NCBI RefSeq assembly: GCF_020745735.1
Contig: NW_026867487.1
Location: forward strand, 4,667,239 to 4,731,238
Source of the DNA: Hemiscyllium ocellatum
Taxonomy: Eukaryota
Reading direction: 5' to 3'
Length of the DNA: 64,000 bases
The position numbers and the translations under genes were made by a program. Below the pieces are notes generated by a model. The model saw only the letters and a list, made by a program, of their open reading frames with translations. It was not told where the DNA came from and did not search any database. Of this stretch, positions 19,860 through 62,734 are shown piece after piece. Position 1 is the stretch's first letter. Each line of letters starts with the position of its first letter.

Positions 19860-19898
19860 AGTTTTTGTACAGGATCGGCCCAGTTCTGAGTCTCAGTG
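19860..19898 (-). other. 23-RSS
   Basis: heptamer CACTGAG (19898-19892), 23-bp spacer, nonamer ACAAAAACT (19868-19860). Confidence 0.85.
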
Positions 19899-22757: not shown

Positions 22758-22796
22758 GGCTTTTGTCCAGATTCTTCCTCTGTTTGTAACACTGTG
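22758..22796 (-). other. 23-RSS
   Basis: CACAGTG (22796-22790), 23-bp spacer, ACAAAAGCC (22766-22758). Confidence 0.9.
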
Positions 22797-23133
22797 CCCC
22801 CATTGGCGCAGAGATAGACGGCGGTGTCGTTAGGTCTAGTGTCTCTCACACTTAGGACAGTGTGTTTGTAGTCCGCACTGACTGAAGCAGAGACCCTGTC
22901 CTGTTGATCAGCTTCTCTTTTGGCCAGCACCAGATACTGGGCTGGCTGGTTCGAGAACTGTCAGTACCAATGCACTATGCCAGATGCCGTTGCTATGGCG
23001 CACTCTATGGAAGTGTTTTCTGCCTCCTTAACAACTGTCCACTGAGCAAGTTGCGTGACTTCATCCTCTCCCGTTTCTACCTTGTAGATCAGAGAGGAAA
23101 GCAGAAAAAAAAACTCGGTAAATTTGAGACATC

Positions 23134-23231
23134 TGAAAATGTGTTCCTGGTTAAAGCACAGCAGGTTAGGCAGCATCCAAGGAATAGGAAATTCGACGTT
23201 TCGGGCATAAGCCCTTCATCAGGAATGAGGA
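23134..23231 (-). mobile_element. 98-bp Penelope-terminus mini-insertion
   Basis: 8-bp direct repeat GAGACATC at 23126-23133 and 23232-23239; single copy of this 8-mer in the paralog. Confidence 0.88.
23191..23226 (-). ncRNA. minimal type I hammerhead ribozyme motif (family 1), intact core
   Basis: attc-CTGATGA-a-gggc ttat gccc-GAAA-c-GTC-gaat on the minus strand. Confidence 0.75.
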
Positions 23232-23830
23232 GAGACATCATCAAGTTACATGAAACGTAAGGTCCACCGAGTTCTGTTGGGGAAAAAAAGAGTTAACAAT
23301 GAGAAAAACACTCTTTTCGTGTCGAACACAGTGTTGCCTTCTTTCGAAGTTGTGAAATAAGTTATGTCTTCGAGTTTATCTTTCCGTACCACGCTTTTCG
23401 CACAATGTGTGTAATGGCACTCCGCTCTCTCATTTAATATATGTCAACGATTCAGCCTGCCCTCTAGTGGCTAAGTCTGGAAATTGTTCTCACCAGAATT
23501 GAATTCACACGATCTTGGTCAATGAAAACCAAAATATCAGATTCCTCCTGTCGCCCCCCACCCCCAAAATATCCTTGCCTGGTTTACTCGACACTTTTTA
23601 TTTCAAATGCAGCACCCAACGATTTCAGGGTATTTTCTTCAAACATTGCAACTGAAACTGTATTCCACACTTCCATCAGCCTGACGAAATTAAGCAAAAG
23701 GTCTCAACATTAATCCGAACATTTTGTCCTGTGATTTGAAGCGGCGTGTCACCTCAGCGTGATGTAATGTGACACACACACACACACACACACACTCTCT
23801 CTCTGATGGGGTCTGCCCAAATAAGGGCCC

Positions 23831-34398: not shown

Positions 34399-34833
34399 AT
34401 GTGCTTTTTATGTGCTTTACTGATAATTATGACAGTGGTGTCAGGTAAGTTCGACCTAAAATCATCAATATGCGCTTCACCAGTTCGATCTTCACATTTT
34501 TTACAACTTCATTATTTCTGTTGCAGGTTCGAGTGGCCAAGATTCAGTTTCCCAGCATCCACTTGAAAAAACGGTTCAGGAAGGAGAGACTGTAATCTTC
34601 AACTGTAATTACACAGCACAGATCACTGCTCCAGTGCTCTTTTGGTACATCCAATATCCCGGGGAAGCTCCGGGATATTTACTGAGTAGATTCAACAAGG
34701 ATGAAGGACAGACGTCTCCAGCTTTCTCTGACAGGTTCTCTTCTACTCTGGACAAAAAGCAGAAAATGTTTCCTTTAAATATCACTGTTGCTCTTGTATC
34801 TGACTCTGCCGTCTACCACTGTGCGCTGAGTCT
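34399..34833 (+). CDS. TRAV: TCR alpha V segment, family a, copy B (leader 34399-34444, V exon 34527-34833)
   Basis: MCFLCALLIIMTVVS, donor gtaagt, acceptor ttgcag; QDSVSQ..FNCNY..WYIQYPGEAP..DSAVYHCALS. Confidence 0.92.
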
Positions 34834-34872
34834 CACGCTGATAAAGAGTTGCATTCAGTCCATACAGAAACT
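34834..34872 (+). other. 23-RSS
   Basis: CACGCTG, 23-bp spacer, ACAGAAACT. Confidence 0.8.
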
Positions 34873-35129
34873 ATCCAGACGCACTCATGAGCCTCCTTTC
34901 CCTACTTGTACCCTAAGCCACATTTCTGATGTGTCGCTGAATTGTCAACTGACAAGATATTGGAAACCAAACGAAAAACATCTGTAATCCAAAGATAACT
35001 CTGCCTGCATTTCACATTGTGCGTTTTTCTACATAAAACCTTCTTATATCGCTGTGCCCGCCGATGGCACGCAGTAATAGAAGAAGCAGAGGGCCATTTA
35101 ACCCAACGAGCCCGCTTTGCCAATCATTA

Positions 35130-35450
35130 AGATCTATCCATTGTCTCGGCTCTTCTGACCTGCATTATCCCCATAACCCTTATTTTCCCAAATATGCAAA
35201 AACTCATTCAAATGTGTCTTGAATAAATTTAATGAAGCTGCCTCCTCTACTTCCTTTGGCATGGAATTCCACTGTCTCTGGGAAAAGCAGTTTCTCCTTT
35301 ACTCAATCCTAAACCCACTTGCCCTAATATTGAGGCCACCGCCTCCAAAACCAGTAAATCTTTCCTCAAGTAAGGAGATCAGAACTGCGCACAATACTCC
35401 GGGTGCGGCCTCACCAACACATTGTACTGTTACAGCAGAACCTCCATGCT
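35130..35450 (-). mobile_element. degenerate CR1 3' fragment; paralog 54610-54930
   Basis: similarity to other CR1 3' ends. Confidence 0.55.
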
Positions 35451-35732
35451 CTTAAATGCAATCAGCATTAAATATTAAGCACTAGTGAGCAGGGCTGACT
35501 TTGTTAAAGGGGAGAATTGAAGTTAGTGCTGCTGTCAGGTTTATTCAGTGATCAGCAAGCCCTGGCGTGGAGTATATTTTGGGTCGACATTGATAGATTA
35601 ATGAATCAACAGGGACAGATGTGAATTGAGTAGTCTGCCAGAAGTTGGAAATGATGTGGATCATATTGTTCGCTAGTGGAGCAGGTTGAACGGAACAAAC
35701 AGCCTCCTTTATTTCGCACCGGACGTCCCGTG

Positions 35733-35750
35733 GTCAACATGTTGACGTCA
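35733..35750 (+). promoter_or_regulatory. palindrome GTCAACATGTTGAC overlapping CRE TGACGTCA in a V promoter; paralog 55213-55230
   Basis: about 150 bp upstream of the leader ATG at 35897. Confidence 0.55.
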
Positions 35751-35896
35751 TTGACTGGAGATCAAAGCAGCTGTTAGCCGATATGGTGATTCCGAACCAT
35801 TCAGCAGCGAGACCGGATATGACACACTATTGACTGCCAGCTGAAAAGAATCAGCTTCAATTTTCTTTGTTCCCACTCACCATCTGCTCTGCAAAT

Positions 35897-36398
35897 ATGT
35901 CGACTGTTATTATTTATTCATTTCTCACTACTACAATGTTCTTAAAAGGCAAGTCTCTGAGTTGTAATTTATTCTCTTGTGTTAAAATATCTATAGCAAT
36001 TTTCGATTTATTTGTGTTCCCTCGATTACAGTATATGCGTTGACTCGGTAACATTCATAGTGAGCGTCACTTTATTTTTATATTTGCACAGGTGTTAATT
36101 GTGCCGATTCGATCTCACAGAAGCCGGCTACAGTGAGACAATTTGAAAGAGATTCAGTCACCATTCGTTTCAGATATTCGACCACAGATAGCATGCATAC
36201 TTTGCAACTGTACCGTCAGGACCCAGGGAAGTCTCCAATATTCTTAATCTACGTTGACAACTTTGGCAGTATTAACAGAGGAGAGGGGGTGTCCGATCGA
36301 TTTTCTGCATCTTTGGACAAGTCAAAAAATGAGGGGAATTTCACCATCTATGAACTGCAGGTGTCTGACAGCGCAGTATATTACTGTGGACTGAGACA
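35897..36398 (+). CDS. TCR alpha/delta V segment, family b, copy B; open frame but lacks Cys23 and Trp41 (leader 35897-35948, V exon 36092-36398)
   Basis: MSTVIIYSFLTTTMFLK with GC donor gcaagt; DSISQKP..VTIRFRY..LQLYRQDPGKSP..DSAVYYCGLR. Confidence 0.85.
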
Positions 36399-36437
36399 CA
36401 CAGTGACAGGAACCAGGCTGAGCCTCGTGCAAAAACA
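36399..36437 (+). other. 23-RSS
   Basis: CACAGTG, 23-bp spacer, GCAAAAACA. Confidence 0.9.
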
Positions 36438-37735
36438 CTGCCAAAATGGAACCAAGAGCTAAATGTGGCTAGTCAAGTCGAGAGTAACATTTACTTCCTA
36501 CCGTAATGCCTGAATGAACCAAGTTCAAATTTAAAAAATATATTTCACACCGAAAGGTCAATGGGTGCTGACTCCGAGAGGGATCTGTGTTCTCACTCTA
36601 TGTTTAATACAAGTGAATAAGATGCAAACATACGATTAAAGAATTGATGACATTGGGCAAATGAAAGTGATTGCCATAGAATTACTGTTAGAAACATCTG
36701 GCATTGTGCTCCAGCCATTGAAGGGGGTGCACAACAGAAATCATGAATCATCAGCTTCAGAACTCCCTGCGACACTGAATTAAGTGACAACAGAAACTTG
36801 ACTTCGAGCAATGCGATGTGATGCGTTCAATATCCAAAAGCAAATCTGTCATTCTTCCTGATATACTTCAATTTAGCGTTTGCCCTCGGTCTGATTTTGA
36901 TCATCCATTAGCTATTCCATGTATCTGCAGCTTATGATTCCTCTGTGATTGATTATTGTTGTACTGATGTTTGCTCATTAGCTTCCTGTCTTGATAACAA
37001 TGTCATGGCGCCATCTAATGATGTAGATGCTTGATACTAATGCATGTAAATGTCTTTAACACTGAGAAAACTCTGATCAGTTTACTACAATTGTTTTGAC
37101 TTTCTCTAGACAGGCTTCAGTGACCATTGTAAATTGATATTTCACGTCACATCCATTTGTTCCTCTGAATGTAATATTTCTGGAACGTTTGATCTGGGAT
37201 ATATTTCGTTCGAAGTTGGAGTTAGACATGAAAGAGCAAAATGCAACCATTTCAGAAGCGGACAGTTCAGAGTTGTGAGAGGAAGAATAAAATTGAGATT
37301 GTCAATGTCACGCCTCTGGCCTTCAATTTGCACCTGCATAGTGAAGGTTGGGAGATCAGATTATACGGAACCAATTTTCGCAAATGCACCTCAGTAGCCT
37401 GGAGAACATGGCGTTAACGGTGTGTTCTCTCAACCATTATGACAAAAGCTGTGAACAAAACGTTCTGAAGAGGAATCATATCAGACTCGAAAAGTTAACA
37501 TAGTTTCACTCTTGACAGATATTGCCAGATCTGTTGAAGTTCTGTAGCTGTTTCTGATGTTATTGCATATTTGTCACCAATTACATCACCGTAATATTCC
37601 TTTGCAATGTTATCATTTTGTGATTTAACTTCATTTTGTTGGGGAGGGGGGAATGAAAAGCAGTCTTTGCAAAGATCTTCAAAATTGCTATGAGTGACTT
37701 TACTTCATGTCGGGGGAGATAGTGAGGACTGCATT

Positions 37736-37771
37736 ATTCCTGATGAAGAGCTTAAGATCGAAACGTTGACC
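37736..37771 (+). ncRNA. degenerate hammerhead motif with GAGC-type stem II; paralogs near 17620-17652 and 57216-57251
   Basis: attc-CTGATGA-a-gagc ttaa gatc-GAAA-c-GTT-ga; the 17.6-kb copy has a perfect gagc/gctc stem but a mutated core. Confidence 0.45.
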
Positions 37772-39780
37772 CTCCAGATCTGTCTGACTTGTTGTGCGTC
37801 TCCAGTGGCACACATTTGACTTTATTTCACGTCGCCACAGCAGGGTGTTGGGTGAAGTTTTCAATAAGCGATAATCACACTTCAATTGAACTTCTTTTAA
37901 TTTCAAAAATATAGTTTACTCATAAAACAATATTTTCATGTATATACCTTGAACTAAAAACTGTTCCATTCTACACAGTTGCTTATCAAGTAAACACACA
38001 GAACGTTCGAGTTTGACTAAATACAAACCAAAGACCTCTCCTGCACATACAACGCTGCTATTTACATATATTTGTCACACTAGGAAAGTCCGATAATTGA
38101 ATGTACCCTCATTTGCCTTCAGCATGATGACCTCAGTCTATGGTCTTTCCCAACTGTGTCTTGGCAGTAGCTGCCCCAATTTTTCATGTGGACTTCAGCA
38201 TGTAGTCCTGATCATAAGAATATCTCAATGTGCAAAATCAGATCGAGGTCAACTCGTTATTCTGGAAGATGAACAAGGCTCAGCAGACCAAGTAGTGTCT
38301 TTCAATGCTTTGATGGTCCTCAAGGTGCAATTGATGCCTGAAATGGCGTGTGTCTGAGGGAAAAGACCATAGCGCACATGAAGCTGCTCAGGACGAGCAT
38401 CAACAAAATTATTGCATTTTACTCCAGACCTACTTGGCAAAGGCAAATTCGAGAAGGAGATGTGTGACAATCTCAAACCCTCGGCAGCCAGTTCAAGGGT
38501 GTTTGTGGTGACACAGGCGGACCATGCATTTATGGTAGAGCCTTTCCCACCACCAGCCAAACGATGTCTTCAAATAGGGGTTGTATTGATAATGTTGTTT
38601 CAAATCTGAGGAAAGGGCACGGGACACAAAACGTAAACTTTAATTTCTCTTCACTGATGCCACCAGACGTTTTCCAGAAACCCCCGTTTTTGTATCAGTA
38701 TCAGTCCATTAGTTTCATGACCCAAAGGGAAAATCTCTGCAATCAGGGATAAGTGTCCAGGCAGTTAAATAAACAGAATCCCAGCGGAGTCATATATCCA
38801 AGACTAAACAAAATCGATTCGAAAATTCCGAATGTTTGGATTACAATACCACCTGTAACTTTCTCTCAACCTAAGTCACCAATTTACAGAGAACAGTATA
38901 TATATTATTTCACAGCCACTGTGTCAAAATTCTGGATCTCCCTTGCTAACAGCACTGTGAGTTTCCTTCCATCTCAAAGAGCTCAGCAGTCCAAGAGGCA
39001 GATCACCTCCACCTTCTCCAATGCAATTTGTGGTCGTAATAGTATTCGGTTTCACTTAAATGTCGCCAGAGGCAGGACAGGATCCTCTCGTCTTTACACC
39101 ATTGACATAATCAGGTAAGAACGATTGAGATCAATCAACAAATTGAGGTGTCCGTTGAAGAATGTTCATTTCCAGACAGCCCAGCAAGCAGAAACCACAT
39201 GCGAATAAGACTTCCACTAATCACGTTGCCTCATTAATCTGCCATTATTGAGTGTGTTTGTTTGATTAGTGTTGTTCAGATTGGAGCTATATCCCACTTG
39301 CTGGTTGGTATTTGAAAGCAAGGCTGCGTTATCCTGGACCAACGAATCTGTCTCTCGCTATTTTGAAACGGTTAACATGCAGCTGCAGAGGCAGGACCTC
39401 AATACAGCACAAAATGTTTGATGTTATTCAGGTTGCTCCGGCGGTGCACGTGGCCGATCAAAATCACGTGACCGATTATGGTTTCCCTCACCAAATGCTT
39501 TGGATTTTGTTGGACGTAACTCGTTGCAGCATTTTCGCTATATCTCATTGCAGTAAACGTGGAACGCTTTGGGACATTTCAAAAGGCATGGACTCATGCA
39601 TTCACTTTTCATTCACTAAACTGACAGCTTTTGTTTATTTCAATAATATATTTATAACGAATAAAGTCATGTATTCAAGTGAAAAAGTATCAGATTTTAC
39701 GCGAATTCGGGTACAATTTCAGATCCACTCTTGATCTCACCGTTTGCCTGACACACTGTCATGTTCAGTGACTCCCTGAC

Positions 39781-39819
39781 AGTTTTTGTACAGTGTCGGC
39801 CCTGTTCTGACTCTCCGTG
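39781..39819 (-). other. 23-RSS
   Basis: CACGGAG, 23-bp spacer, ACAAAAACT. Confidence 0.82.
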
Positions 39820-40884
39820 GGGCGCAGTGCGCAGTAATACACTGCAGAGTCTGCCAGTTCTGTTTTCACCACTTTCAGGTTGATGGTGCAGTTCACATGA
39901 TCGAGCTTTGAGGACAACCGGTCCCCTTGAAACCTTTCTGCGTTCGCTCCAAATTTGCTTCTCTGTAGCAGAATCTCCATGGAACCATTGGAATGTTGGA
40001 GGTACCAGAAAAGGTAAGGAGTGCTGCTTGTTGTCGTATAATTACAGAACAACTGGACATTGTCCTCCTCATTCACTGCAATTGAAGCCGGTGTCTGTGA
40101 GACAGAATCTCCTCGGCAAAGTCCTGCAAAAATCGATTGATCAATTTACTTGATTGATTTGTCACGTGTACCTCAGTGCACTGGAAAGCTTTCTTTACCA
40201 GCGGTATCGGCAGATCATAGAAAAGAAGGATGTACAGATAATAGAATGAGAAGAACAAATTTAGACAGAGGCAGACAGGTTACGTTTAAAAGGTCAACAT
40301 TAGCAGGATCAGCACTTTAAGTTAGAGACTCTCGGAGAATCCGAAAATTACAGAAAATATTTCATTTTTCTGTTGCCGCAATCACCCCCTGACCTTGAAC
40401 AATAACCTGCGAAATAAGTTCGGGAAAGAACAAAAATTAATTACATGCAACTCGGCAGCTATATTGGTAAAGGGATTTGACAGATTAAATAAAACCTCCT
40501 TCAGTACACGGGTCACACCGCCTAACAAGGTCATTTTCCATTTCGTTCCCGATCCTGAAGGGAAAACTGCAGATGGTATGTTAATTTATAACTCTCGCCT
40601 CTGTCAATGTATCTGAACAGACCCCGTCCTTCTTAATTCCCAGCCTAAGTCTTCAACAGTCTTTCAATTGGGTCGTTTGCTAACTCATACCAAATAGTGC
40701 AGGTGTTGGATAAATTTGGTTATATTGATTTGGAGACAATGTATCACTTCTTCTACTTTGATGGAACTGTTGGGGTTAATGTAATTGTCGCTGTGGATAT
40801 GAAAGAAAAAGATCATCAACTTATCAACCTACCAGTTAGAACAGCTGCAGCTGTGAGGAATAAACACAATGCTCCAGGCGTCAT
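39820..40884 (-). CDS. TRAV: TCR alpha/delta V segment, family c, copy B (leader 40884-40833, V exon 40123-39820)
   Basis: MTPGALCLFLTAAAVLT, donor gtaggt, acceptor tttgcag; LFCNY..WYLQ..DSAVYYCALRP. Confidence 0.9.
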
Positions 40885-42282
40885 TGTTACCGAGAGATCA
40901 CAGCGAATGTGAGCAGATCGAAGCTAAAGTAATTTTCGTCAAGAATTGCTAACATTTCCGGATCTCTGCCCATTGGTTCATTGTTGACAAAGGCATGAGG
41001 TGACAACCAATGATTGTCAAACGCCTTTGTTCATTAATTCACACAATCAGCTTCACGCGCTTTGAACTTCATTTCATATGGCCACAAGAGAAAGGAACAC
41101 CGTGAATTTATGAGCCAGACGACGGGGTCTTGCATACACTTTGAACCAACATTGATATTTGGCAGTTTTAGGTTCTCTGCAGGCGAAGTCAGAGAAGGAA
41201 CACAGTCCACGTTGTTCGAGTGTCAGAAGCAGGAATTCTGCAGATCAGCGAACAGCTCTCTGGCATTTTGAGATCTTCCATTCACCAGGCTGAGAGACAG
41301 TGTGTTAGAGTTTTTTGGACACAGTGACGATGTCCATTAAAAAAAGTGCATATTCAATTTCTTAAATACTTGAGTGGAATGTCGATTTTGCTGCATTTTC
41401 TGGTAAGATTCATAGCAATCGACATTTCTTTAATTTTACATTGTGCCATCACAAATGTATCAACGGTATCTACACCGGGTTCATTACAGCAAAAAGACAA
41501 AATGGTTCACTGCCGCATTTCCAACGTGCATTAGTGATGCATACAAGAGTTGCATGCAACACCCAAATACTGTAATATTTTTTGAAGGAACACATGATGA
41601 CAGAGTTACTCTGAAAGTCTGAATGGGAATGGTGAGAGAGCAGCGGTACACATTAATAGAAATCCTGACAGAAGAGAATGTATTTTGTCAAAGACGCAAA
41701 CGTAAATGGCAAGGCAAGCGGTGAGGATGGCACAAAGTGTCTGCGATAAGGACACAACGAATTCAAGTGAGTGGGACTACAGTTTCCACTGGAACAGGTA
41801 TCTGGGAACGTTGCACCTCAAGGAAATGAACAGTTGAGTCGACGGGATGATGCAGAATGATTAGCTTATTCGAATCATTTTTGAGAGAACTGGAATGTGT
41901 AAGTGTTAATGAAATGTGAATGATGTTAAAAGAAAGGCCATATTACTTTCCTTCAAGGTTAATTTATGACTTAAACTGATGTAATATTTAACGTCTATGC
42001 ATGACACTCGTTATTTTTCCCTTTTATCTTTCAATAGTTTATCATCATTTCATCTTCTACATGTATTGTTACTTTATTTCCGCTCTTTCTCTCATCTTTT
42101 ATTTCACTGATGTTAGCATATGTGAATGTGCTTGCTTTATCTCCACCCAGACTTCCAATTCTCTTCACTTCGTGCACTCTTCCTGCTCGGTTGTTCTACC
42201 GCTTTTTCTGTTGCCGTGGTCCCCTTAACATCGAATTATACAGCCCTGAAATAATTGCATTGATGCTCAGCAGCGTGGCATA

Positions 42283-42321
42283 GGTTTTTGTTCAGACTCT
42301 CCCTCTGCTTGTAACACTGTG
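42283..42321 (-). other. perfect consensus 23-RSS
   Basis: CACAGTG, 23-bp spacer, ACAAAAACC. Confidence 0.95.
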
Positions 42322-42659
42322 CCCTCACTGGCACAGAGATAGATGGCGGTGTCGTTAAGTCTGGTGTCTCGCACACTCAGGACACTGAGTTTGTAATCTG
42401 TCCTGACTGAAGCGGAGATCCTCTCATGTTGATCAGCTTCTCTTTTGGCCATCACCAGATGCTGGGGCGGCTGGTTCGGGAGCTGTCTGTACCAATGCAC
42501 TGTGCGAAATGTCGTTGTTGTGGAGCACTCTATGGAAGCGTTTTCTGCCTCCTTAACAACTGTCCACTGAGCAAGTTGCGTGACTTCATCCTCTGCCGTT
42601 TTTACCTTGTAGATCAGAGAGGAAAGCAGGAAAAGAACTCGGTAAATTTGAGACATCAT
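42322..42659 (-). CDS. TRAV: TCR V segment, family d, copy B; leader and V in one uninterrupted frame
   Basis: MMSQIYRVLFLLSSLIYKVKTA-EDEVTQ..IEC..WYRQLPNQPP..DTAIYLCASE; 112 codons plus GG, then RSS. Confidence 0.88.
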
Positions 42660-43206
42660 CAAGTTACATGAAGTGTAAGGTCCACCGAGTTCTGTTGGGA
42701 AAAAAAAAGATTTGACAATGAGAAAAACACTCTTTTCGTGTCGAACACAGTGTTGCCTTCTTTCGAAGTTGTGAAATAATTTATGTCTTCGAGTTTATCT
42801 TTCCATACCAGGCTTTTCGCACAATGTGTGTATGGCACTCCGCTCTCTCATTTAATATATGTCAACGATTCAGCCTGCCCTCTAGTGGCTAAGTCTGGAA
42901 ATTGTGACGTAAATGTTCTCACCAGAATGGAATTCACACGATCTTGTTCAATGAAAACCAAAATATCTGATTCCTCCTGCCGCCCCACACCCCCCCACCC
43001 CCAAATATCCTTGCCTGGTTTACTCGGCACTTTTTATTTCAAATGCAGCACCCAACGATTTCAGGGTATTTTCTTCACGCATTGCAACTGCAACTGTATT
43101 CCAGACTTCAATCAGCCTGCCTAAATTAAGCAAAAGACCTCAACATTAATCGGAACATTTTGTCCTGTGCTTTGAGGCGGCATGTCACCTCAGCGTGATG
43201 GAATGT

Positions 43207-43248
<42 letters not shown>

Positions 43249-44821
43249 GGGTCTGACCAAATAAGGGCCCATTCCTGAAGAAGGGCTTATGCCCGAAATG
43301 TCTAATCACCTGTTCCTTGGATGCTGCCTGACCTGCTGCGCTTTACCAGCAACACATTTTCAGCTCTGCCCAAAACCAGGCAAGTATCTCTGAAATCTCA
43401 TTCTCTTGGAAGATACTGTCCATTCATTATGCTGGTGCTTCAGAAGCTGAAACTAAATGGTGCGGCCGCACTTGGAGTATTGCGCATAGTTCTGGTCACC
43501 ACATTAGGAAGGATGTGAAAGCTTTGGAAAGAGTTCAGAGGAGATTTATTGTGATATTGCCTGTTATGGATGAGAGGTTTTACGAGGAAAGGCTGAGGGA
43601 CTTGAGGATGTTTTCATTGGAGAGAAGAAGGTTGAGAGATGAATTAATCGAGACATAGAAGATAACCAGAGGGTTGGATGGAGAGGTCAGTGAGAGCCTT
43701 TTTCCTCAGATAGCGATGGCTAGCACGACGGGACCTGGCTTTAAACTGAGGAGTGATCGATATAGGACAAATATCAGAGGTAGGTTGTTTACTCAGAGAG
43801 TAGAAGAGGCGTGGAATGCTCTTCCTGCAACAGTAGTAGGCTCTCCAACTTTAAGGGCATTTAAATGGCCATTGGATAGGCATGTGGACGAGAACAGAAT
43901 AATGTAGGTTAGACGGGCTTCAGATCGGTTTCACAGGTTGTCGTAACACCGAGGGCCGAAGGGCCTGTACTGCGCTGGAATGTTCCATGTCCTAAATATG
44001 GACAGAAGTGGAGCAACAGATAGCGTGTGAAATGAAAACGAGCAGGGGACTTGCTAAATTTTAGCATTTTGCTTTTGTGTGTGTGTGCGTGCCTCTGGGT
44101 GTGTGTGTGTGTGTGTGTGTCTTTGTATTTATAATTCTGTCTGCGCATCTATTTATGTATGTTGCGGCCTGTGTATATGTGTGCTTTTCTGTGGCTACCA
44201 ATGTGCATTTCTGTGTTCATGTGCATGTCTTTTTGTGTGTTTACGTGTGTGTGTCTGTGTTTATCTTTATCTGTTGGTGTTTGTGTGCGTGTGCGGGCAC
44301 ATGTGTGTGAATGGATGTGTCCATCTCCTTGTGAAAAGGAAAATATTCTGGCTTGATGTTGAAAATATGACAGTGTCGAAGTTCTCTGCTTGTTGCTGTC
44401 CTCTGAATAAGATCATATAGTTCCACCATCTGCTCTCGAATCGGACATTTCAAAAACCATCACATTCTCTTAAGAAGGCTCAGATTGGGAATTTTTCAAG
44501 GGCTACTTTCTAATATTCATGACGTAATAGAACGAGGGGTTATAGTTTAAACTCATCCATTTTTAAACAGCTATCCAATGTTCTGAGATCAATGATATGG
44601 ATGAGAATGTTCTAGGCATGAACGGAAAGTTTGCAGATGACACTAACATCGGAGGTATGGTGGACAGTGAGGAAGGTCATCAGAAATTGCAGCAGGATCC
44701 TGATCAGTTGGGGAACTGGGCCAGAAATAGTAAATGGAATTTGGTATGACGGCTGGCATTTTGGAAAGCTAATTCAAAGCAAGAGCTTGATGATGGATGG
44801 TAGTGCCTTAAGGAGGCACAA

Positions 44822-53878: not shown

Positions 53879-54313
53879 ATGTGCTTTTTATGTGCTTTAC
53901 TGATAATTATGACAGTGGTGTCAGGTAAGTTCGACCTAAAATCATCAATATGCGCTTCACCAGTTCGATCTTCACATTTTTTACAACTTCATTATTTCTG
54001 TTGCAGGTTCGAGTGGCCAAGATTCAGTTTCCCAGCATCCACTTGAAAAAACGGTTCAGGAAGGAGAGACTGTAATCTTCAACTGTAATTACACAGCACA
54101 GATCACTGCTCCAGTGCTCTTTTGGTACATCCAATATCCCGGGGAAGCTCCGGGATATTTACTGAGTAGATTCAACAAGGATGAAGGACAGACGTCTCCA
54201 GCTTTCTCTGACAGGTTCTCTTCTACTCTGGACAAAAAGCAGAAAATGTTTCCTTTAAATATCACTGTTGCTCTTGTATCTGACTCTGCCGTCTACCACT
54301 GTGCGCTGAGTCT
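53879..54313 (+). CDS. TRAV: TCR alpha V, family a, copy C (leader 53879-53924, V exon 54007-54313; RSS 54314-54352)
   Basis: no difference seen from 34399-34833. Confidence 0.92.
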
Positions 54314-55376
54314 CACGCTGATAAAGAGTTGCATTCAGTCCATACAGAAACTATCCAGACGCACTCATGAGCCTCCTTTCCCTACTTGTACCCTAAGCCA
54401 CATTTCTGATGTGTCGCTGAATTGTCAACTGACAAGATATTGGAAACCAAACGAAAAACATCTGTAATCCAAAGATAACTCTGCCTGCATTTCACATTGT
54501 GCGTTTTTCTACATAAAACCTTCTTATATCGCTGTGCCCGCCGATGGCACGCAGTAATAGAAGAAGCAGAGGGCCATTTAACCCAACGAGCCCGCTTTGC
54601 CAATCATTAAGATCTATCCATTGTCTCGGCTCTTCTGACCTGCATTATCCCCATAACCCTTATTTTCCCAAATATGCAAAAACTCATTCAAATGTGTCTT
54701 GAATAAATTTAATGAAGCTGCCTCCTCTACTTCCTTTGGCATGGAATTCCACTGTCTCTGGGAAAAGCAGTTTCTCCTTTACTCAATCCTAAACCCACTT
54801 GCCCTAATATTGAGGCCACCGCCTCCAAAACCAGTAAATCTTTCCTCAAGTAAGGAGATCAGAACTGCGCACAATACTCCGGGTGCGGCCTCACCAACAC
54901 ATTGTACTGTTACAGCAGAACCTCCATGCTCTTAAATGCAATCAGCATTAAATATTAAGCACTAGTGAGCAGGGCTGACTTTGTTAAAGGGGAGAATTGA
55001 AGTTAGTGCTGCTGTCAGGTTTATTCAGTGATCAGCAAGCCCTGGCGTGGAGTATATTTTGGGTCGACATTGATAGATTAATGAATCAACAGGGACAGAT
55101 GTGAATTGAGTAGTCTGCCAGAAGTTGGAAATGATGTGGATCATATTGTTCGCTAGTGGAGCAGGTTGAACGGAACAAACAGCCTCCTTTATTTCGCACC
55201 GGACGTCCCGTGGTCAACATGTTGACGTCATTGACTGGAGATCAAAGCAGCTGTTAGCCGATATGGTGATTCCGAACCATTCAGCAGCGAGACCGGATAT
55301 GACACACTATTGACTGCCAGCTGAAAAGAATCAGCTTCAATTTTCTTTGTTCCCACTCACCATCTGCTCTGCAAAT

Positions 55377-55878
55377 ATGTCGACTGTTATTATTTATTCA
55401 TTTCTCACTACTACAATGTTCTTAAAAGGCAAGTCTCTGAGTTGTAATTTATTCTCTTGTGTTAAAATATCTATAGCAATTTTCGATTTATTTGTGTTCC
55501 CTCGATTACAGTATATGCGTTGACTCGGTAACATTCATAGTGAGCGTCACTTTATTTTTATATTTGCACAGGTGTTAATTGTGCCGATTCGATCTCACAG
55601 AAGCCGGCTACAGTGAGACAATTTGAAAGAGATTCAGTCACCATTCGTTTCAGATATTCGACCACAGATAGCATGCATACTTTGCAACTGTACCGTCAGG
55701 ACCCAGGGAAGTCTCCAATATTCTTAATCTACGTTGACAACTTTGGCAGTATTAACAGAGGAGAGGGGGTGTCCGATCGATTTTCTGCATCTTTGGACAA
55801 GTCAAAAAATGAGGGGAATTTCACCATCTATGAACTGCAGGTGTCTGACAGCGCAGTATATTACTGTGGACTGAGACA
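55377..55878 (+). CDS. TCR V, family b, copy C, lacking Cys23/Trp41 (leader 55377-55428, V exon 55572-55878; RSS 55879-55917)
   Basis: no difference seen from 35897-36398. Confidence 0.85.
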
Positions 55879-58800
55879 CACAGTGACAGGAACCAGGCTG
55901 AGCCTCGTGCAAAAACACTGCCAAAATGGAACCAAGAGCTAAATGTGGCTAGTCAAGTCGAGAGTAACATTTACTTCCTACCGTAATGCCTGAATGAACC
56001 AAGTTCAAATTTAAAAAATATATTTCACACCGAAAGGTCAATGGGTGCTGACTCCGAGAGGGATCTGTGTTCTCACTCTATGTTTAATACAAGTGAATAA
56101 GATGCAAACATACGATTAAAGAATTGATGACATTGGGCAAATGAAAGTGATTGCCATAGAATTACTGTTAGAAACATCTGGCATTGTGCTCCAGCCATTG
56201 AAGGGGGTGCACAACAGAAATCATGAATCATCAGCTTCAGAACTCCCTGCGACACTGAATTAAGTGACAACAGAAACTTGACTTCGAGCAATGCGATGTG
56301 ATGCGTTCAATATCCAAAAGCAAATCTGTCATTCTTCCTGATATACTTCAATTTAGCGTTTGCCCTCGGTCTGATTTTGATCATCCATTAGCTATTCCAT
56401 GTATCTGCAGCTTATGATTCCTCTGTGATTGATTATTGTTGTACTGATGTTTGCTCATTAGCTTCCTGTCTTGATAACAATGTCATGGCGCCATCTAATG
56501 ATGTAGATGCTTGATACTAATGCATGTAAATGTCTTTAACACTGAGAAAACTCTGATCAGTTTACTACAATTGTTTTGACTTTCTCTAGACAGGCTTCAG
56601 TGACCATTGTAAATTGATATTTCACGTCACATCCATTTGTTCCTCTGAATGTAATATTTCTGGAACGTTTGATCTGGGATATATTTCGTTCGAAGTTGGA
56701 GTTAGACATGAAAGAGCAAAATGCAACCATTTCAGAAGCGGACAGTTCAGAGTTGTGAGAGGAAGAATAAAATTGAGATTGTCAATGTCACGCCTCTGGC
56801 CTTCAATTTGCACCTGCATAGTGAAGGTTGGGAGATCAGATTATACGGAACCAATTTTCGCAAATGCACCTCAGTAGCCTGGAGAACATGGCGTTAACGG
56901 TGTGTTCTCTCAACCATTATGACAAAAGCTGTGAACAAAACGTTCTGAAGAGGAATCATATCAGACTCGAAAAGTTAACATAGTTTCACTCTTGACAGAT
57001 ATTGCCAGATCTGTTGAAGTTCTGTAGCTGTTTCTGATGTTATTGCATATTTGTCACCAATTACATCACCGTAATATTCCTTTGCAATGTTATCATTTTG
57101 TGATTTAACTTCATTTTGTTGGGGAGGGGGGAATGAAAAGCAGTCTTTGCAAAGATCTTCAAAATTGCTATGAGTGACTTTACTTCATGTCGGGGGAGAT
57201 AGTGAGGACTGCATTATTCCTGATGAAGAGCTTAAGATCGAAACGTTGACCCTCCAGATCTGTCTGACTTGTTGTGCGTCTCCAGTGGCACACATTTGAC
57301 TTTATTTCACGTCGCCACAGCAGGGTGTTGGGTGAAGTTTTCAATAAGCGATAATCACACTTCAATTGAACTTCTTTTAATTTCAAAAATATAGTTTACT
57401 CATAAAACAATATTTTCATGTATATACCTTGAACTAAAAACTGTTCCATTCTACACAGTTGCTTATCAAGTAAACACACAGAACGTTCGAGTTTGACTAA
57501 ATACAAACCAAAGACCTCTCCTGCACATACAACGCTGCTATTTACATATATTTGTCACACTAGGAAAGTCCGATAATTGAATGTACCCTCATTTGCCTTC
57601 AGCATGATGACCTCAGTCTATGGTCTTTCCCAACTGTGTCTTGGCAGTAGCTGCCCCAATTTTTCATGTGGACTTCAGCATGTAGTCCTGATCATAAGAA
57701 TATCTCAATGTGCAAAATCAGATCGAGGTCAACTCGTTATTCTGGAAGATGAACAAGGCTCAGCAGACCAAGTAGTGTCTTTCAATGCTTTGATGGTCCT
57801 CAAGGTGCAATTGATGCCTGAAATGGCGTGTGTCTGAGGGAAAAGACCATAGCGCACATGAAGCTGCTCAGGACGAGCATCAACAAAATTATTGCATTTT
57901 ACTCCAGACCTACTTGGCAAAGGCAAATTCGAGAAGGAGATGTGTGACAATCTCAAACCCTCGGCAGCCAGTTCAAGGGTGTTTGTGGTGACACAGGCGG
58001 ACCATGCATTTATGGTAGAGCCTTTCCCACCACCAGCCAAACGATGTCTTCAAATAGGGGTTGTATTGATAATGTTGTTTCAAATCTGAGGAAAGGGCAC
58101 GGGACACAAAACGTAAACTTTAATTTCTCTTCACTGATGCCACCAGACGTTTTCCAGAAACCCCCGTTTTTGTATCAGTATCAGTCCATTAGTTTCATGA
58201 CCCAAAGGGAAAATCTCTGCAATCAGGGATAAGTGTCCAGGCAGTTAAATAAACAGAATCCCAGCGGAGTCATATATCCAAGACTAAACAAAATCGATTC
58301 GAAAATTCCGAATGTTTGGATTACAATACCACCTGTAACTTTCTCTCAACCTAAGTCACCAATTTACAGAGAACAGTATATATATTATTTCACAGCCACT
58401 GTGTCAAAATTCTGGATCTCCCTTGCTAACAGCACTGTGAGTTTCCTTCCATCTCAAAGAGCTCAGCAGTCCAAGAGGCAGATCACCTCCACCTTCTCCA
58501 ATGCAATTTGTGGTCGTAATAGTATTCGGTTTCACTTAAATGTCGCCAGAGGCAGGACAGGATCCTCTCGTCTTTACACCATTGACATAATCAGGTAAGA
58601 ACGATTGAGATCAATCAACAAATTGAGGTGTCCGTTGAAGAATGTTCATTTCCAGACAGCCCAGCAAGCAGAAACCACATGCGAATAAGACTTCCACTAA
58701 TCACGTTGCCTCATTAATCTGCCATTATTGAGTGTGTTTGTTTGATTAGTGTTGTTCAGATTGGAGCTATATCCCACTTGCTGGTTGGTATTTGAAAGCA

Positions 58801-59299
58801 AGGCTGCGTTATCCTGGACCAACGAATCTGTCTCTCGCTATTTTGAAACGGTTAACATGCAGCTGCAGAGGCAGGACCTCAATACAGCACAAAATGTTTG
58901 ATGTTATTCAGGTTGCTCCGGCGGTGCACGTGGCCGATCAAAATCACGTGACCGATTATGGTTTCCCTCACCAAATGCTTTGGATTTTGTTGGACGTAAC
59001 TCGTTGCAGCATTTTCGCTATATCTCATTGCAGTAAACGTGGAACGCTTTGGGACATTTCAAAAGGCATGGACTCATGCATTCACTTTTCATTCACTAAA
59101 CTGACAGCTTTTGTTTATTTCAATAATATATTTATAACGAATAAAGTCATGTATTCAAGTGAAAAAGTATCAGATTTTACGCGAATTCGGGTACAATTTC
59201 AGATCCACTCTTGATCTCACCGTTTGCCTGACACACTGTCATGTTCAGTGACTCCCTGACAGTTTTTGTACAGTGTCGGCCCTGTTCTGAGTCTCCGTG

Positions 59300-60364
59300 G
59301 GGCGCAGTGCGCAGTAATACACTGCAGAGTCTGCCAGTTCTGTTTTCACCACTTTCAGGTTGATGGTGCTGTTCACATGATCGAGCTTTGAGGACAACCG
59401 GTCCCCTTGAAACCTTTCTGCGTTCGCTCCAAATTTGCTTCTCTGTAGCAGAATCTCCATGGAACCATTGGAATGTTGGAGGTACCAGAAAAGGTAAGGA
59501 GTGCTGCTTGTTGTCGTATAATTACAGAACAACTGGACATTGTCCTCCTCATTCACTGCAATTGAAGCCGGTGTCTGTGAGACAGAATCTCCTCGGCAAA
59601 GTCCTGCAAAAATCGATTGATCAATTTACTTGATTGATTTGTCACGTGTACCTCAGTGCACTGGAAAGCTTTCTTTACCAGCGGTATCGGCAGATCATAG
59701 AAAAGAAGGATGTACAGATAATAGAATGAGAAGAACAAATTTAGACAGAGGCAGACAGGTTACGTTTAAAAGGTCAACATTAGCAGGATCAGCACTTTAA
59801 GTTAGAGACTCTCGGAGAATCCGAAAATTACAGAAAATATTTCATTTTTCTGTTGCCGCAATCACCCCCTGACCTTGAACAATAACCTGCGAAATAAGTT
59901 CGGGAAAGAACAAAAATTAATTACATGCAACTCGGCAGCTATATTGGTAAAGGGATTTGACAGATTAAATAAAACCTCCTTCAGTACACGGGTCACACCG
60001 CCTAACAAGGTCATTTTCCATTTCGTTCCCGATCCTGAAGGGAAAACTGCAGATGGTATGTTAATTTATAACTCTCGCCTCTGTCAATGTATCTGAACAG
60101 ACCCCGTCCTTCTTAATTCCCAGCCTAAGTCTTCAACAGTCTTTCAATTGGGTCGTTTGCTAACTCATACCAAATAGTGCAGGTGTTGGATAAATTTGGT
60201 TATATTGATTTGGAGACAATGTATCACTTCTTCTACTTTGATGGAACTGTTGGGGTTAATGTAATTGTCGCTGTGGATATGAAAGAAAAAGATCATCAAC
60301 TTATCAACCTACCAGTTAGAACAGCTGCAGCTGTGAGGAATAAACACAATGCTCCAGGCGTCAT
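59300..60364 (-). CDS. TRAV: TCR V, family c, copy C (leader 60364-60313, V exon 59603-59300; RSS 59261-59299)
   Basis: as copy B except FR3 Ser for Cys and one RSS spacer base. Confidence 0.9.
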
Positions 60365-61801
60365 TGTTACCGAGAGATCACAGCGAATGTGAGCAGATCG
60401 AAGCTAAAGTAATTTTCGTCAAGAATTGCTAACATTTCCGGATCTCTGCCCATTGGTTCATTGTTGACAAAGGCATGAGGTGACAACCAATGATTGTCAA
60501 ACGCCTTTGTTCATTAATTCACACAATCAGCTTCACGCGCTTTGAACTTCATTTCATATGGCCACAAGAGAAAGGAACACCGTGAATTTATGAGCCAGAC
60601 GACGGGGTCTTGCATACACTTTGAACCAACATTGATATTTGGCAGTTTTAGGTTCTCTGCAGGCGAAGTCAGAGAAGGAACACAGTCCACGTTGTTCGAG
60701 TGTCAGAAGCAGGAATTCTGCAGATCAGCGAACAGCTCTCTGGCATTTTGAGATCTTCCATTCACCAGGCTGAGAGACAGTGTGTTAGAGTTTTTTGGAC
60801 ACAGTGACGATGTCCATTAAAAAAAGTGCATATTCAATTTCTTAAATACTTGAGTGGAATGTCGATTTTGCTGCATTTTCTGGTAAGATTCATAGCAATC
60901 GACATTTCTTTAATTTTACATTGTGCCATCACAAATGTATCAACGGTATCTACACCGGGTTCATTACAGCAAAAAGACAAAATGGTTCACTGCCGCATTT
61001 CCAACGTGCATTAGTGATGCATACAAGAGTTGCATGCAACACCCAAATACTGTAATATTTTTTGAAGGAACACATGATGACAGAGTTACTCTGAAAGTCT
61101 GAATGGGAATGGTGAGAGAGCAGCGGTACACATTAATAGAAATCCTGACAGAAGAGAATGTATTTTGTCAAAGACGCAAACGTAAATGGCAAGGCAAGCG
61201 GTGAGGATGGCACAAAGTGTCTGCGATAAGGACACAACGAATTCAAGTGAGTGGGACTACAGTTTCCACTGGAACAGGTATCTGGGAACGTTGCACCTCA
61301 AGGAAATGAACAGTTGAGTCGACGGGATGATGCAGAATGATTAGCTTATTCGAATCATTTTTGAGAGAACTGGAATGTGTAAGTGTTAATGAAATGTGAA
61401 TGATGTTAAAAGAAAGGCCATATTACTTTCCTTCAAGGTTAATTTATGACTTAAACTGATGTAATATTTAACGTCTATGCATGACACTCGTTATTTTTCC
61501 CTTTTATCTTTCAATAGTTTATCATCATTTCATCTTCTACATGTATTGTTACTTTATTTCCGCTCTTTCTCTCATCTTTTATTTCACTGATGTTAGCATA
61601 TGTGAATGTGCTTGCTTTATCTCCACCCAGACTTCCAATTCTCTTCACTTCGTGCACTCTTCCTGCTCGGTTGTTCTACCGCTTTTTCTGTTGCCGTGGT
61701 CCCCTTAACATCGAATTATACAGCCCTGAAATAATTGCATTGATGCTCAGCAGCGTGGCATAGGTTTTTGTTCAGACTCTCCCTCTGCTTGTAACACTGT
61801 G

Positions 61802-62139
61802 CCCTCACTGGCACAGAGATAGATGGCGGTGTCGTTAAGTCTGGTGTCTCGCACACTCAGGACACTGAGTTTGTAATCTGTCCTGACTGAAGCGGAGATC
61901 CTCTCATGTTGATCAGCTTCTCTTTTGGCCATCACCAGATGCTGGGGCGGCTGGTTCGGGAGCTGTCTGTACCAATGCACTGTGCGAAATGTCGTTGTTG
62001 TGGAGCACTCTATGGAAGCGTTTTCTGCCTCCTTAACAACTGTCCACTGAGCAAGTTGCGTGACTTCATCCTCTGCCGTTTTTACCTTGTAGATCAGAGA
62101 GGGAAGCAGGAAAAGAACTCGGTAAATTTGAGACATCAT
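61802..62139 (-). CDS. TRAV: TCR V, family d, copy C, single-frame leader-V (RSS 61763-61801)
   Basis: as copy B except Pro for Ser in the leader. Confidence 0.88.
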
Positions 62140-62686
62140 CAAGTTACATGAAGTGTAAGGTCCACCGAGTTCTGTTGGGAAAAAAAAAGATTTGACAATG
62201 AGAAAAACACTCTTTTCGTGTCGAACACAGTGTTGCCTTCTTTCGAAGTTGTGAAATAATTTATGTCTTCGAGTTTATCTTTCCATACCAGGCTTTTCGC
62301 ACAATGTGTGTATGGCACTCCGCTCTCTCATTTAATATATGTCAACGATTCAGCCTGCCCTCTAGTGGCTAAGTCTGGAAATTGTGACGTAAATGTTCTC
62401 ACCAGAATGGAATTCACACGATCTTGTTCAATGAAAACCAAAATATCTGATTCCTCCTGCCGCCCCACACCCCCCCACCCCCAAATATCCTTGCCTGGTT
62501 TACTCGGCACTTTTTATTTCAAATGCAGCACCCAACGATTTCAGGGTATTTTCTTCACGCATTGCAACTGCAACTGTATTCCAGACTTCAATCAGCCTGC
62601 CTAAATTAAGCAAAAGACCTCAACATTAATCGGAACATTTTGTCCTGTGCTTTGAGGCGGCATGTCACCTCAGCGTGATGGAATGT

Positions 62687-62731
<45 letters not shown>
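62687..62731. repeat. (CA)n microsatellite; shorter paralogs at ~43207-43245 and ~23771-23795
   Basis: pure CA run, 6 nt longer than in copy B. Confidence 0.9.

Positions 62732-62734
<3 letters not shown>

What the first reader, a model, noticed from the sequence alone, without database searches (positions are those of the whole stretch)
42322..42659. TCR V gene with leader fused to the V exon (no leader intron), resembling the TRAV4/TRAV26 lineage
Seen: ATG, a basic-then-hydrophobic stretch (MMSQIYRVLFLLSSLIYKVKTA) and the V domain share one frame. The other three V families here all have a separate phase-1 leader exon. The Trp41-to-Cys104 stretch is 54 residues versus 60 in family a, and the RSS is a perfect consensus. 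From memory, this stretch aligns without gaps to human TRAV26-1 (WYRQIHSQGPQY..DTAVYYC), and chicken V-alpha-1 and some marsupial TRAV of that group were reported to lack the leader intron. Inference: if this is a shark, the intronless TRAV lineage may date to the jawed-vertebrate ancestor. Alternatively it could be an independent retro-processed origin. Same gene at 61802-62139; pseudogene at 22797-23241.
Basis: partly seen in the sequence, partly recalled or inferred. Interest (0 to 1): 0.72.

Follow-up and report, generated by a model that had tools for sequence, protein, structure and literature searches.

The report
Shark TCR V gene, unsplit leader
This shark T-cell-receptor V gene segment encodes its signal peptide and variable domain in one exon and keeps a perfect recombination signal, a conserved exception to the usual split leader previously described in chicken, and a nurse shark relative is unexpectedly used in a TCR beta chain.

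Summary
On the minus strand, an ATG (42659), a 22-residue hydrophobic leader, a V-set domain and a perfect 23-RSS (42321-42283) lie in one ORF. A near-identical copy sits at 61802-62139 and a broken copy at 22797-23241, inside a 19.5-kb four-V cassette repeated three times.

The fusion is real and old. Four bamboo shark germline genes and one metagenome-derived shark gene have the same layout. A nurse shark cDNA protein is colinear with it from the ATG. No upstream exon can feed in, because the acceptor-like AG is missing in 3 of 6 intact genes and in-frame stops precede the ATG in three.

The domain is alpha/delta-like and its neighbours are alpha/delta-type. TRAV26-1 is not its best match. 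Bird TRAV1-type genes fall in another well-supported clade, although an AU test cannot reject a common clade. No marsupial TRAV precedent was found.

The only transcript of this family joins it to a J and C-beta.

The scan flagged this same family several times elsewhere in this genome, and one follow-up reached the same structural conclusion. I class it as a new member of a known kind (chicken TRAV1 and TRGV1), of moderate interest.

The parts
42594..42659 (-). Leader (signal peptide) coding part, 22 codons, contiguous with the V domain; start at ATG 42659 or ATG 42656
   Evidence: The ATG is conserved in all six intact germline relatives, and three of them have in-frame stops upstream. Nurse shark cDNA protein P0006 starts at the homologous Met.
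42322..42593 (-). V domain coding part (EDEVTQ... to ...YLCASE plus 2 nt), with Cys45, Trp56 and Cys109 present
   Evidence: Pfam V-set at 35.5 bits. dN/dS is 0.27-0.54 against bamboo shark genes and there are no indels.
42283..42321 (-). 23-RSS: heptamer 42321-42315, spacer 42314-42292, nonamer 42291-42283; perfect consensus
   Evidence: 0 mismatches.
42849..42862 (-). TATA-like block (ACATATATTAAATG) about 190 nt upstream of the ATG; candidate core promoter
   Evidence: Conserved in subfamily A and partly in B; coordinates. Function is inferred.
42875..42888 (-). CTCF-site-like motif CCACTAGAGGGCAG, sense strand, about 220-250 nt upstream of the ATG
   Evidence: It occurs once per cassette and only upstream of this family, in the window and in three bamboo shark loci. 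It matches 13 of 14 bases upstream of the divergent P0004. Binding is not tested.
42692..42702 (-). Acceptor-like T-run plus CCCAACAG, 33 nt upstream of the ATG; not a conserved splice site
   Evidence: The AG is absent in bamboo shark P0002, P0003 and P0004.
61763..62139 (-). Second intact copy of the gene (61802-62139) with a perfect RSS (61763-61801); one difference, S13P
   Evidence: The cassette copies are 99.1% identical over 18.6 kb.
22758..23241 (-). Pseudogene copy: 98-nt insert plus 8-nt duplication after the start codon, +1 T frameshift, TGA in FR2, nonamer with 1 mismatch
39813..40121 (-). Neighbouring family b V exon (alpha-like, split leader); further copies at 59290-59601 and 19886-20215
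36073..36408 (+). Neighbouring family c V exon (lacks Cys23 and Trp41), opposite strand; further copy at 55553-55888
34399..34837 (+). Neighbouring family d V gene with a conventional phase-1 leader exon (34399-34444), 82-nt intron and V exon; further copy of the V exon at 53985-54317

Best explanation
This is a germline, apparently functional T-cell-receptor V gene segment of a cartilaginous-fish V lineage that is alpha/delta-like in sequence. Its start codon, signal peptide and V domain lie in one uninterrupted exon, followed by a consensus 23-RSS. It is one of four V genes in a 19.5-kb cassette: families a and b on one strand, c and d on the other. The cassette is repeated in tandem inside an alpha/delta-type V array. 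The inferred mechanism is as follows. Transcription starts from a promoter within about 250 nt upstream. RAG joins the V to a partner with a 12-RSS. The mature mRNA needs only the J-to-C splice, and translation starts at the conserved ATG. The fusion arose before the two shark subfamilies (A, here; B, nurse and bamboo shark) split, and probably after the lineage separated from its elephant shark relatives. Which constant region this particular copy serves is not known.
For: One ORF runs from the ATG to the RSS in two copies. The RSS is perfect and the V-set domain is confirmed. Bamboo shark genes P0001-P0004 and shark gene P0009 have the same single-ORF layout, with read-through of the RSS in the gene models. 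Nurse shark protein P0006 contains leader, V, junction, J and C in one chain, so it comes from spliced mRNA. It aligns with the genomic leader plus V from its first Met, apart from the window's extra first Met. The ATG is conserved. The upstream acceptor-like AG is lost in 3 of 6 genes, stops lie 3, 17 and 25 codons upstream of the ATG in three genes, and no conserved upstream leader exon exists within 1.5 kb. Leader, V and RSS form an indel-free block between indel-rich flanks, and V dN/dS is 0.27-0.54. The same four-V cassette occurs on a bamboo shark contig. The core family has 99/96 support, and with three Callorhinchus genes 96/85. All named non-shark neighbours are alpha or alpha/delta V genes. 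Solved-structure matches are mostly alpha chains.
Against: There is no transcript of this exact gene or species. Expression rests on one nurse shark protein record that is 65% identical. Signal-peptide cleavage was not predicted. Position -3 of the expected site (VKTA|ED) is Lys or Glu in subfamily A, which is unusual, and comparable single-exon leaders of chicken TRGV1 were judged poor signal peptides (PMC10972964). Leader dN/dS is about 1 on only 4-5 changes. The window holds no J or C segment, so locus identity is inferred from the neighbours and from unchecked earlier notes.
Confidence: 0.85

Rival explanations
1. A conventional split leader is hidden here. A distant upstream exon encodes the true leader and splices into the acceptor-like site at 42692, or into an AG inside the apparent leader, so the in-frame ATG is incidental.
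For: T9CCCAACAG at 42702-42692 looks like a strong acceptor in phase 1, and the frame stays open for 33 codons upstream of the ATG in this copy.
Against: The AG is absent in bamboo shark P0002, P0003 and P0004. P0003 has a TGA three codons before the ATG, and P0002 and P0004 have stops 17 and 25 codons upstream. The only upstream ATG-plus-hydrophobic ORFs are (TG)n artefacts, and splicing them into that acceptor creates a stop. The nurse shark cDNA protein begins at the homologous Met.
Confidence: 0.04
2. The family is functionally a V-beta family. Members, possibly including these copies, are used in TCR beta chains. That could happen because relatives sit in the beta locus, or because V segments of the alpha/delta-type array rearrange to D-beta/J-beta in trans.
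For: P0006 joins this leader and V family to a J ending LTVLE and to a constant start that is identical over 28 residues to a protein named T-cell receptor beta chain [Ginglymostoma cirratum]. It also aligns with mouse TCR beta across the V-J-C junction. The window V ends in CAS, a common V-beta ending (my own knowledge). A 23-RSS is compatible with a 5' D-beta 12-RSS.
Against: This rests on one protein record only, and it belongs to subfamily B, which groups with P0004 and P0009 rather than with the window gene. The window's neighbours and nearest named relatives are alpha/delta-type. Earlier notes, which are unchecked, put the beta locus on another piece of the assembly. Subfamily B flanks share nothing with this cassette beyond the gene, so B may simply live elsewhere.
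Confidence: 0.25
3. This is an open reading frame without function. The segment is intact and recombination-competent on paper, but it is rarely or never expressed as protein because the fused leader is a poor signal peptide.
For: The residue at -3 of the expected cleavage site is charged. Leader substitutions cluster in the last five residues with dN/dS near 1. Chicken single-exon TRGV1 leaders were classed as ORF for this reason (PMC10972964).
Against: The hydrophobic core MSQIYRVLFLLSSLIY is almost invariant between two genera while the flanks diverge 9-29% with many indels. A family member appears in an in-frame TCR transcript with this leader. The V exon is under purifying selection.
Confidence: 0.1
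4. The shark family and avian TRAV1 descend from one intronless V lineage that already existed in the jawed-vertebrate ancestor.
For: Chicken TRAV1 has the same gene structure (PMC10972964). An owl TRAV1-type protein with the QVQQ motif is the best named non-shark hit of the family profile, at E 4.4e-8. The AU test does not reject a joint clade (p 0.22 and 0.48).
Against: In the careful tree, bird TRAV1-type domains lie in a starred clade with mammalian TRAVs (96/82), which as far as is known have split leaders. The shark family lies in another starred clade with Callorhinchus genes (96/85). The profile search is limited by shared 5-residue words. One shared origin would require many independent regains of the intron.
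Confidence: 0.12

Closest known systems
Chicken TRAV1 (V-alpha-1) genes, and most chicken TRGV1 genes
   Same: Start codon, leader and V domain are encoded in one exon and the RSS is retained. They form a multi-member family inside an otherwise split-leader locus (PMC10972964).
   Different: They belong to a different vertebrate class and, in my tree, to a different clade. Many chicken members have weak RSSs or poor predicted signal peptides, whereas this gene has a perfect RSS. The chicken feature is described there as unique.
Opossum TRMVj (TCR mu)
   Same: It is a V exon that lacks the leader intron (PMC2275272).
   Different: TRMVj is already joined to D and J in the germline, has no RSS, and is thought to be retro-transposed. 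The shark gene is unrearranged, with an intact RSS and a conserved upstream region.
Shark NAR-TcR supporting V-delta segments
   Same: They are shark TCR V segments that lack a separate leader exon (my own knowledge of Criscitiello et al. 2006; not read here).
   Different: Those have no leader at all and receive an upstream exon through a splice acceptor. This gene has its own ATG and hydrophobic leader, and its acceptor-like AG is not conserved.
Human TRAV26-1
   Same: Solved chains named TRAV26-1 match the mature domain at E about 4e-8.
   Different: It is not the best match, since several other alpha chains score 1e-10 to 3e-9. The matched ranges differ by two residues, so the whole-domain alignment is not gapless. 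To my knowledge human TRAV genes have split leaders.
Nurse shark TCR beta cDNA protein P0006 (UniParc UPI0001F848D4)
   Same: It has the same leader and V family: 65% identity, colinear from the Met.
   Different: It belongs to subfamily B and is joined to J-beta/C-beta. The window gene belongs to subfamily A and sits among alpha/delta-type V genes.

Membership tests
Rearranging antigen-receptor V gene segment (V-set domain plus RSS) | V-set immunoglobulin domain with Cys23, Trp41 and Cys104 | tested here: met
   Pfam PF07686 scores 35.5 bits against a cut-off of 26. Cys45, Trp56 and Cys109 of the precursor are invariant in the family.
Rearranging antigen-receptor V gene segment (V-set domain plus RSS) | Recombination signal directly 3' of the V, heptamer-23-nonamer | tested here: met
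   CACAGTG, 23 nt, ACAAAAACC with 0 mismatches at 42321-42283.
Rearranging antigen-receptor V gene segment (V-set domain plus RSS) | Working signal peptide | tested here: inconclusive
   There is a basic residue (R7), a 10-residue hydrophobic core, and Ala or Gly at -1. But Lys or Glu sits at -3 in subfamily A. No signal-peptide predictor was available.
Rearranging antigen-receptor V gene segment (V-set domain plus RSS) | Found rearranged in transcripts | tested here: inconclusive
   This is shown for a 65% identical nurse shark relative only. No transcript of this gene or species was available.
Single-exon-leader V genes (chicken TRAV1 type) | ATG, leader and V in one exon with no leader intron | tested here: met
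   plus cDNA colinearity.
Single-exon-leader V genes (chicken TRAV1 type) | Common descent with avian TRAV1 | tested here: inconclusive
   The two groups fall in separate starred clades, but AU p values of 0.22 and 0.48 for a forced joint clade do not reject it.
TRAV/TRDV (alpha/delta V genes) | Nearest relatives are alpha/delta V genes | tested here: met
   Solved-chain matches are dominated by alpha chains. Named neighbours are TRAV23/DV6, TRAV21, alpha chain V regions and alpha/delta variable 22.0.
TRAV/TRDV (alpha/delta V genes) | Lies in the TRA/TRD locus, upstream of TRDC/TRAJ/TRAC | not testable with these tools
   The window holds no J or C segment. Neighbouring families b and d are alpha-type (nurse shark alpha-V5 primers in PMC5931798). 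Unchecked earlier notes place antibody-type VH and NAR relics on the same piece.
TRAV/TRDV (alpha/delta V genes) | Expressed with C-alpha or C-delta | tested here: inconclusive
   The only family transcript found carries C-beta. No alpha or delta transcript was found in three word-index searches and one exhaustive search.
TRAV4/TRAV26 lineage | Groups with TRAV4/26 orthologues in a tree | not tested
   No TRAV4/26 sequences were available from the tools. Solved TRAV26-1 chains match but rank below other alpha chains.
NAR-TcR supporting V-delta | No leader; a conserved 5' splice acceptor receives the NAR V exon | tested here: not met
   The gene has its own conserved ATG and leader, and the acceptor-like AG is absent in 3 of 6 genes.
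Retro-processed germline-joined V (TRMVj type) | V already joined to D/J, RSS lost | tested here: not met
   The RSS is intact, and the upstream region is conserved between genera and contains a TATA-like block and a CTCF-like motif.

The most novel reading that the evidence does not exclude
One fused-leader V lineage serves both the TCR beta system and the alpha/delta system in sharks. Either V genes of alpha/delta type were copied into the beta locus and kept working there, or V segments lying in the alpha/delta array rearrange to D-beta/J-beta. In either case the usual strict assignment of V families to one TCR locus would not hold for this lineage.
Probability: 0.3. Interest if true: 0.7.

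Novelty: new member of a known kind. Interest (0 to 1): 0.48.

Why it matters
Reviews and locus papers treat the split leader as a property of all V gene segments (PMC2275272), and the chicken single-exon leader is called unique (PMC10972964). A conserved and apparently used shark family with the same structure shows that the leader intron is dispensable for a rearranging V gene. It also shows that the intron has been lost, or bypassed, at least once in the oldest living jawed-vertebrate lineage. In practice, V-gene finders that demand a splice acceptor will miss this family in shark genomes. The beta-chain transcript of a family that looks and sits like alpha/delta V genes raises a testable question about V-gene traffic between TCR loci.

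Tried and rejected
1. Structure prediction from the 8-sequence family alignment gave mean pLDDT 41.5. That is too poor for a fold search, so none was run.

2. As a control for alpha-versus-beta assignment, I searched a named nurse shark V-beta against solved chains. The list filled with antibody VH constructs, so this method cannot positively identify shark V-beta. I use it only to say that the window V is alpha-like.

3. Rfam found no ribozyme or other family in the pseudogene insert at E up to 0.01, and only chance-level snoRNA hits at E up to 10.

4. Genomic DNA could not be obtained for the catshark relative P0063 (file too large; its gene model spans 2.2 kb, so it has an intron somewhere), for the elephant shark gene P0042, or for the cDNA P0006. 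As a result the fusion could not be dated outside orectolobiform sharks, and no 5' UTR could be compared.

5. Three papers that might settle the beta usage or the chicken details were not held.

6. A third AU test, family a with the clade around the nurse shark V-beta, did not finish. The members of that clade carried no beta names, so I dropped it.

7. The idea that GTAAAAACGGCAG inside the leader is a collapsed intron was rejected. It is 13 nt long, removing it breaks the frame, and it is not conserved.

8. A look-up of earlier notes by sequence was blank.

Full report
**What is there**

The feature lies on the minus strand. ATG ATG at 42659-42654 opens a reading frame of 112 codons plus two bases that ends at 42322. 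It encodes a 22-residue leader with one Arg and then a ten-residue hydrophobic core. A V domain follows, with the canonical Cys, Trp and Cys; Pfam V-set scores 35.5 bits against a cut-off of 26. Directly after it comes CACAGTG, 23 nt and ACAAAAACC without a mismatch. Only two such perfect sites exist in the window, both behind copies of this gene.

The window holds three tandem copies of a cassette of about 19.5 kb. Copies 2 and 3 are 99.1% identical over 18.6 kb, and copy 1 is much older. The gene at 61802-62139 differs by one base (S13P). The gene at 22797-23241 is dead: it has a 98-nt insert with an 8-nt duplication right after the start codon, an extra T in the leader, and a TGA in FR2.

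Each cassette carries four V genes. Families a (this one) and b are on the minus strand, and families c and d are on the plus strand. Family d has a textbook phase-1 leader exon with an 82-nt intron. Families c and b have plausible leader exons. Nothing comparable lies upstream of family a. The Trp-to-Cys stretch is 54 residues here, against 59 in b and 60 in d.

**Is the fusion real?**

Four lines of evidence say yes.

- Relatives have the same layout. Four bamboo shark "hypothetical proteins" (84-85% and 55% identical) are single ORFs that run from the same Met through the V and read through the RSS. A fifth gene, on a metagenome contig, has the same layout.
- A transcript matches the genome. 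Protein P0006 contains leader, V, a junction, a J and the start of a constant region, so it can only come from spliced mRNA. It aligns with the genomic leader plus V from its first Met (query 2-111 to 1-110).
- Nothing upstream can supply a different leader. The acceptor-like T-run plus CCCAACAG at 42702-42692 has no AG in three of the six intact genes. In-frame stops lie 3, 17 and 25 codons before the ATG in three genes. The only upstream ATG-plus-hydrophobic ORFs are (TG)n microsatellites, and splicing them into that site makes a stop.
- The block is under constraint. Leader, V and RSS are indel-free in every comparison with the bamboo shark, while both flanks diverge 9-29% with many indels. 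The V exon has dN/dS 0.27-0.54.

The weak point is the cleavage region. The last five leader residues vary, and position -3 is Lys or Glu in this subfamily. I could not run a signal-peptide predictor.

**What kind of V it is**

The mature domain matches solved TCR alpha chains far more often than anything else, despite the abundance of antibodies in that library. The first beta chain appears at E 1e-7. Family b next door is clearly alpha-like. Family d resembles nurse shark alpha-V5 as defined by published primers (PMC5931798).

Every named non-shark neighbour I looked up is an alpha or alpha/delta V gene. The same four-V cassette occurs on a bamboo shark contig. Earlier notes of this scan, which I did not check, call the genome the epaulette shark. 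They place antibody-type VH segments and NAR relics on the same assembly piece, and the beta locus on another piece. I therefore read the window as part of an alpha/delta-type V array.

**The unexpected point**

P0006 continues into a J ending LTVLE and a constant start that is identical over 28 residues to a protein named T-cell receptor beta chain of the nurse shark. It also aligns with mouse TCR beta across the junction. So the one known transcript of this family is a beta chain.

In the careful tree, P0006 groups with bamboo shark P0004 and with P0009 as subfamily B (100/86). Subfamily B is sister to the window's subfamily A, and together they have 99/96 support. Subfamily B shares no flanking sequence with this cassette, so it may lie in the beta locus, but I could not test that. 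Which constant region subfamily A serves is open.

**Evolution**

The shark family joins three elephant shark V genes with 96/85 support, so the lineage is old within cartilaginous fish. Their exon structure could not be read.

The literature confirms that chicken TRAV1, and most chicken TRGV1, encode leader and V in one exon; the authors call this unique (PMC10972964). The marsupial case is TRMVj, a germline-joined V without an RSS, not a TRAV (PMC2275272).

An owl TRAV1-type protein is the best named non-shark hit of the family profile. In the tree, however, bird TRAV1-type domains sit with mammalian TRAVs in another starred clade. An AU test with 88 columns does not reject a forced joint clade (p 0.22 and 0.48). 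Independent origin is the simpler reading, but it is not proven.

How the fusion arose is also open. The leader length and the position four codons before the mature end fit a precise loss of the usual phase-1 intron. Alternatively, a new ATG may have arisen in the 3' end of the old intron. The hydrophobic core is 83% pyrimidine at all three codon positions, unlike the family d leader exon. This is a hint, not a test.

**Regulatory hints**

A TATA-like block about 190 nt upstream of the ATG and a CTCF-site-like motif 220-250 nt upstream are conserved. The motif occurs once per cassette, always on the sense strand, and only in front of this family, in both sharks.

**Standing**

The scan has flagged this family several times elsewhere in this genome, and one follow-up (s1-219758) reached the same structural conclusion. 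I found no paper describing it in sharks. I class it as a new member of a known kind, of moderate interest. The beta-chain usage is the part most worth following up.

Noticed in passing
window 42875-42888, 62355-62368, 23457-23470 (minus strand); L001 9754-9767, L003 9758-9771, L004 7273-7286: CCACTAGAGGGCAG, which looks like a CTCF-site core, occurs exactly once per cassette. It is always 220-250 nt upstream of the family-a ATG on the sense strand and never near families b, c or d. It matches 13 of 14 bases upstream of the divergent P0004.
   Followed up: partly
window about 23134-23231 (minus strand), inside the pseudogene leader: A 98-nt insert flanked by an 8-nt duplication (GATGTCTC) sits right after the start codon. 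It contains CTGATGA...GAAAC, but Rfam finds no hammerhead or other family there (nothing at E up to 0.01, chance-level hits only at E up to 10). The duplication restores an ATG, so the frameshift and the stop are what killed the gene, not the insert.
   Followed up: partly
window 34399-42659 and 53985-62139; L001, L003, L004: Each cassette holds two V genes on one strand (a, b) and two on the other (c, d), and this is conserved in the bamboo shark. Whatever the position of the J-C region, half of the V genes of every cassette would have to rearrange by inversion.
   Followed up: no
window 36073-36408 and 55553-55888 (plus strand): The family c V exon is open and has an RSS with 2 mismatches, but it has Phe and Leu where Cys23 and Trp41 should be (TIRFRYSTT...LQLYRQ). 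The bamboo shark copy shows the same.
   Followed up: no
window 24500-63480: Cassette copies 2 and 3 are 99.1% identical over 18.6 kb (147 mismatches). This is either a very recent duplication or two haplotypes laid in tandem by the assembler. The family b copies differ by Cys to Ser in HVNCTINL.
   Followed up: partly
P0169 (nurse shark protein named T-cell receptor beta chain), residues 20-116: This V-beta domain's best matches among solved structures are antibody heavy-chain V domains, not TCR beta chains.
   Followed up: no
L005 (JGI metagenome 3300026616, contig of 1001 nt): A shark TCR V gene of subfamily B with a fused leader and a 23-RSS sits on a metagenome contig. It is presumably host DNA in a microbiome sample.
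   Followed up: no
window about 43245-43280 and 62725-62760 (minus strand, about 590-620 nt upstream of the ATG): A (TG)n microsatellite upstream of the gene yields spurious Met-Cys-Val repeat ORFs that a naive leader search picks up.
   Followed up: yes
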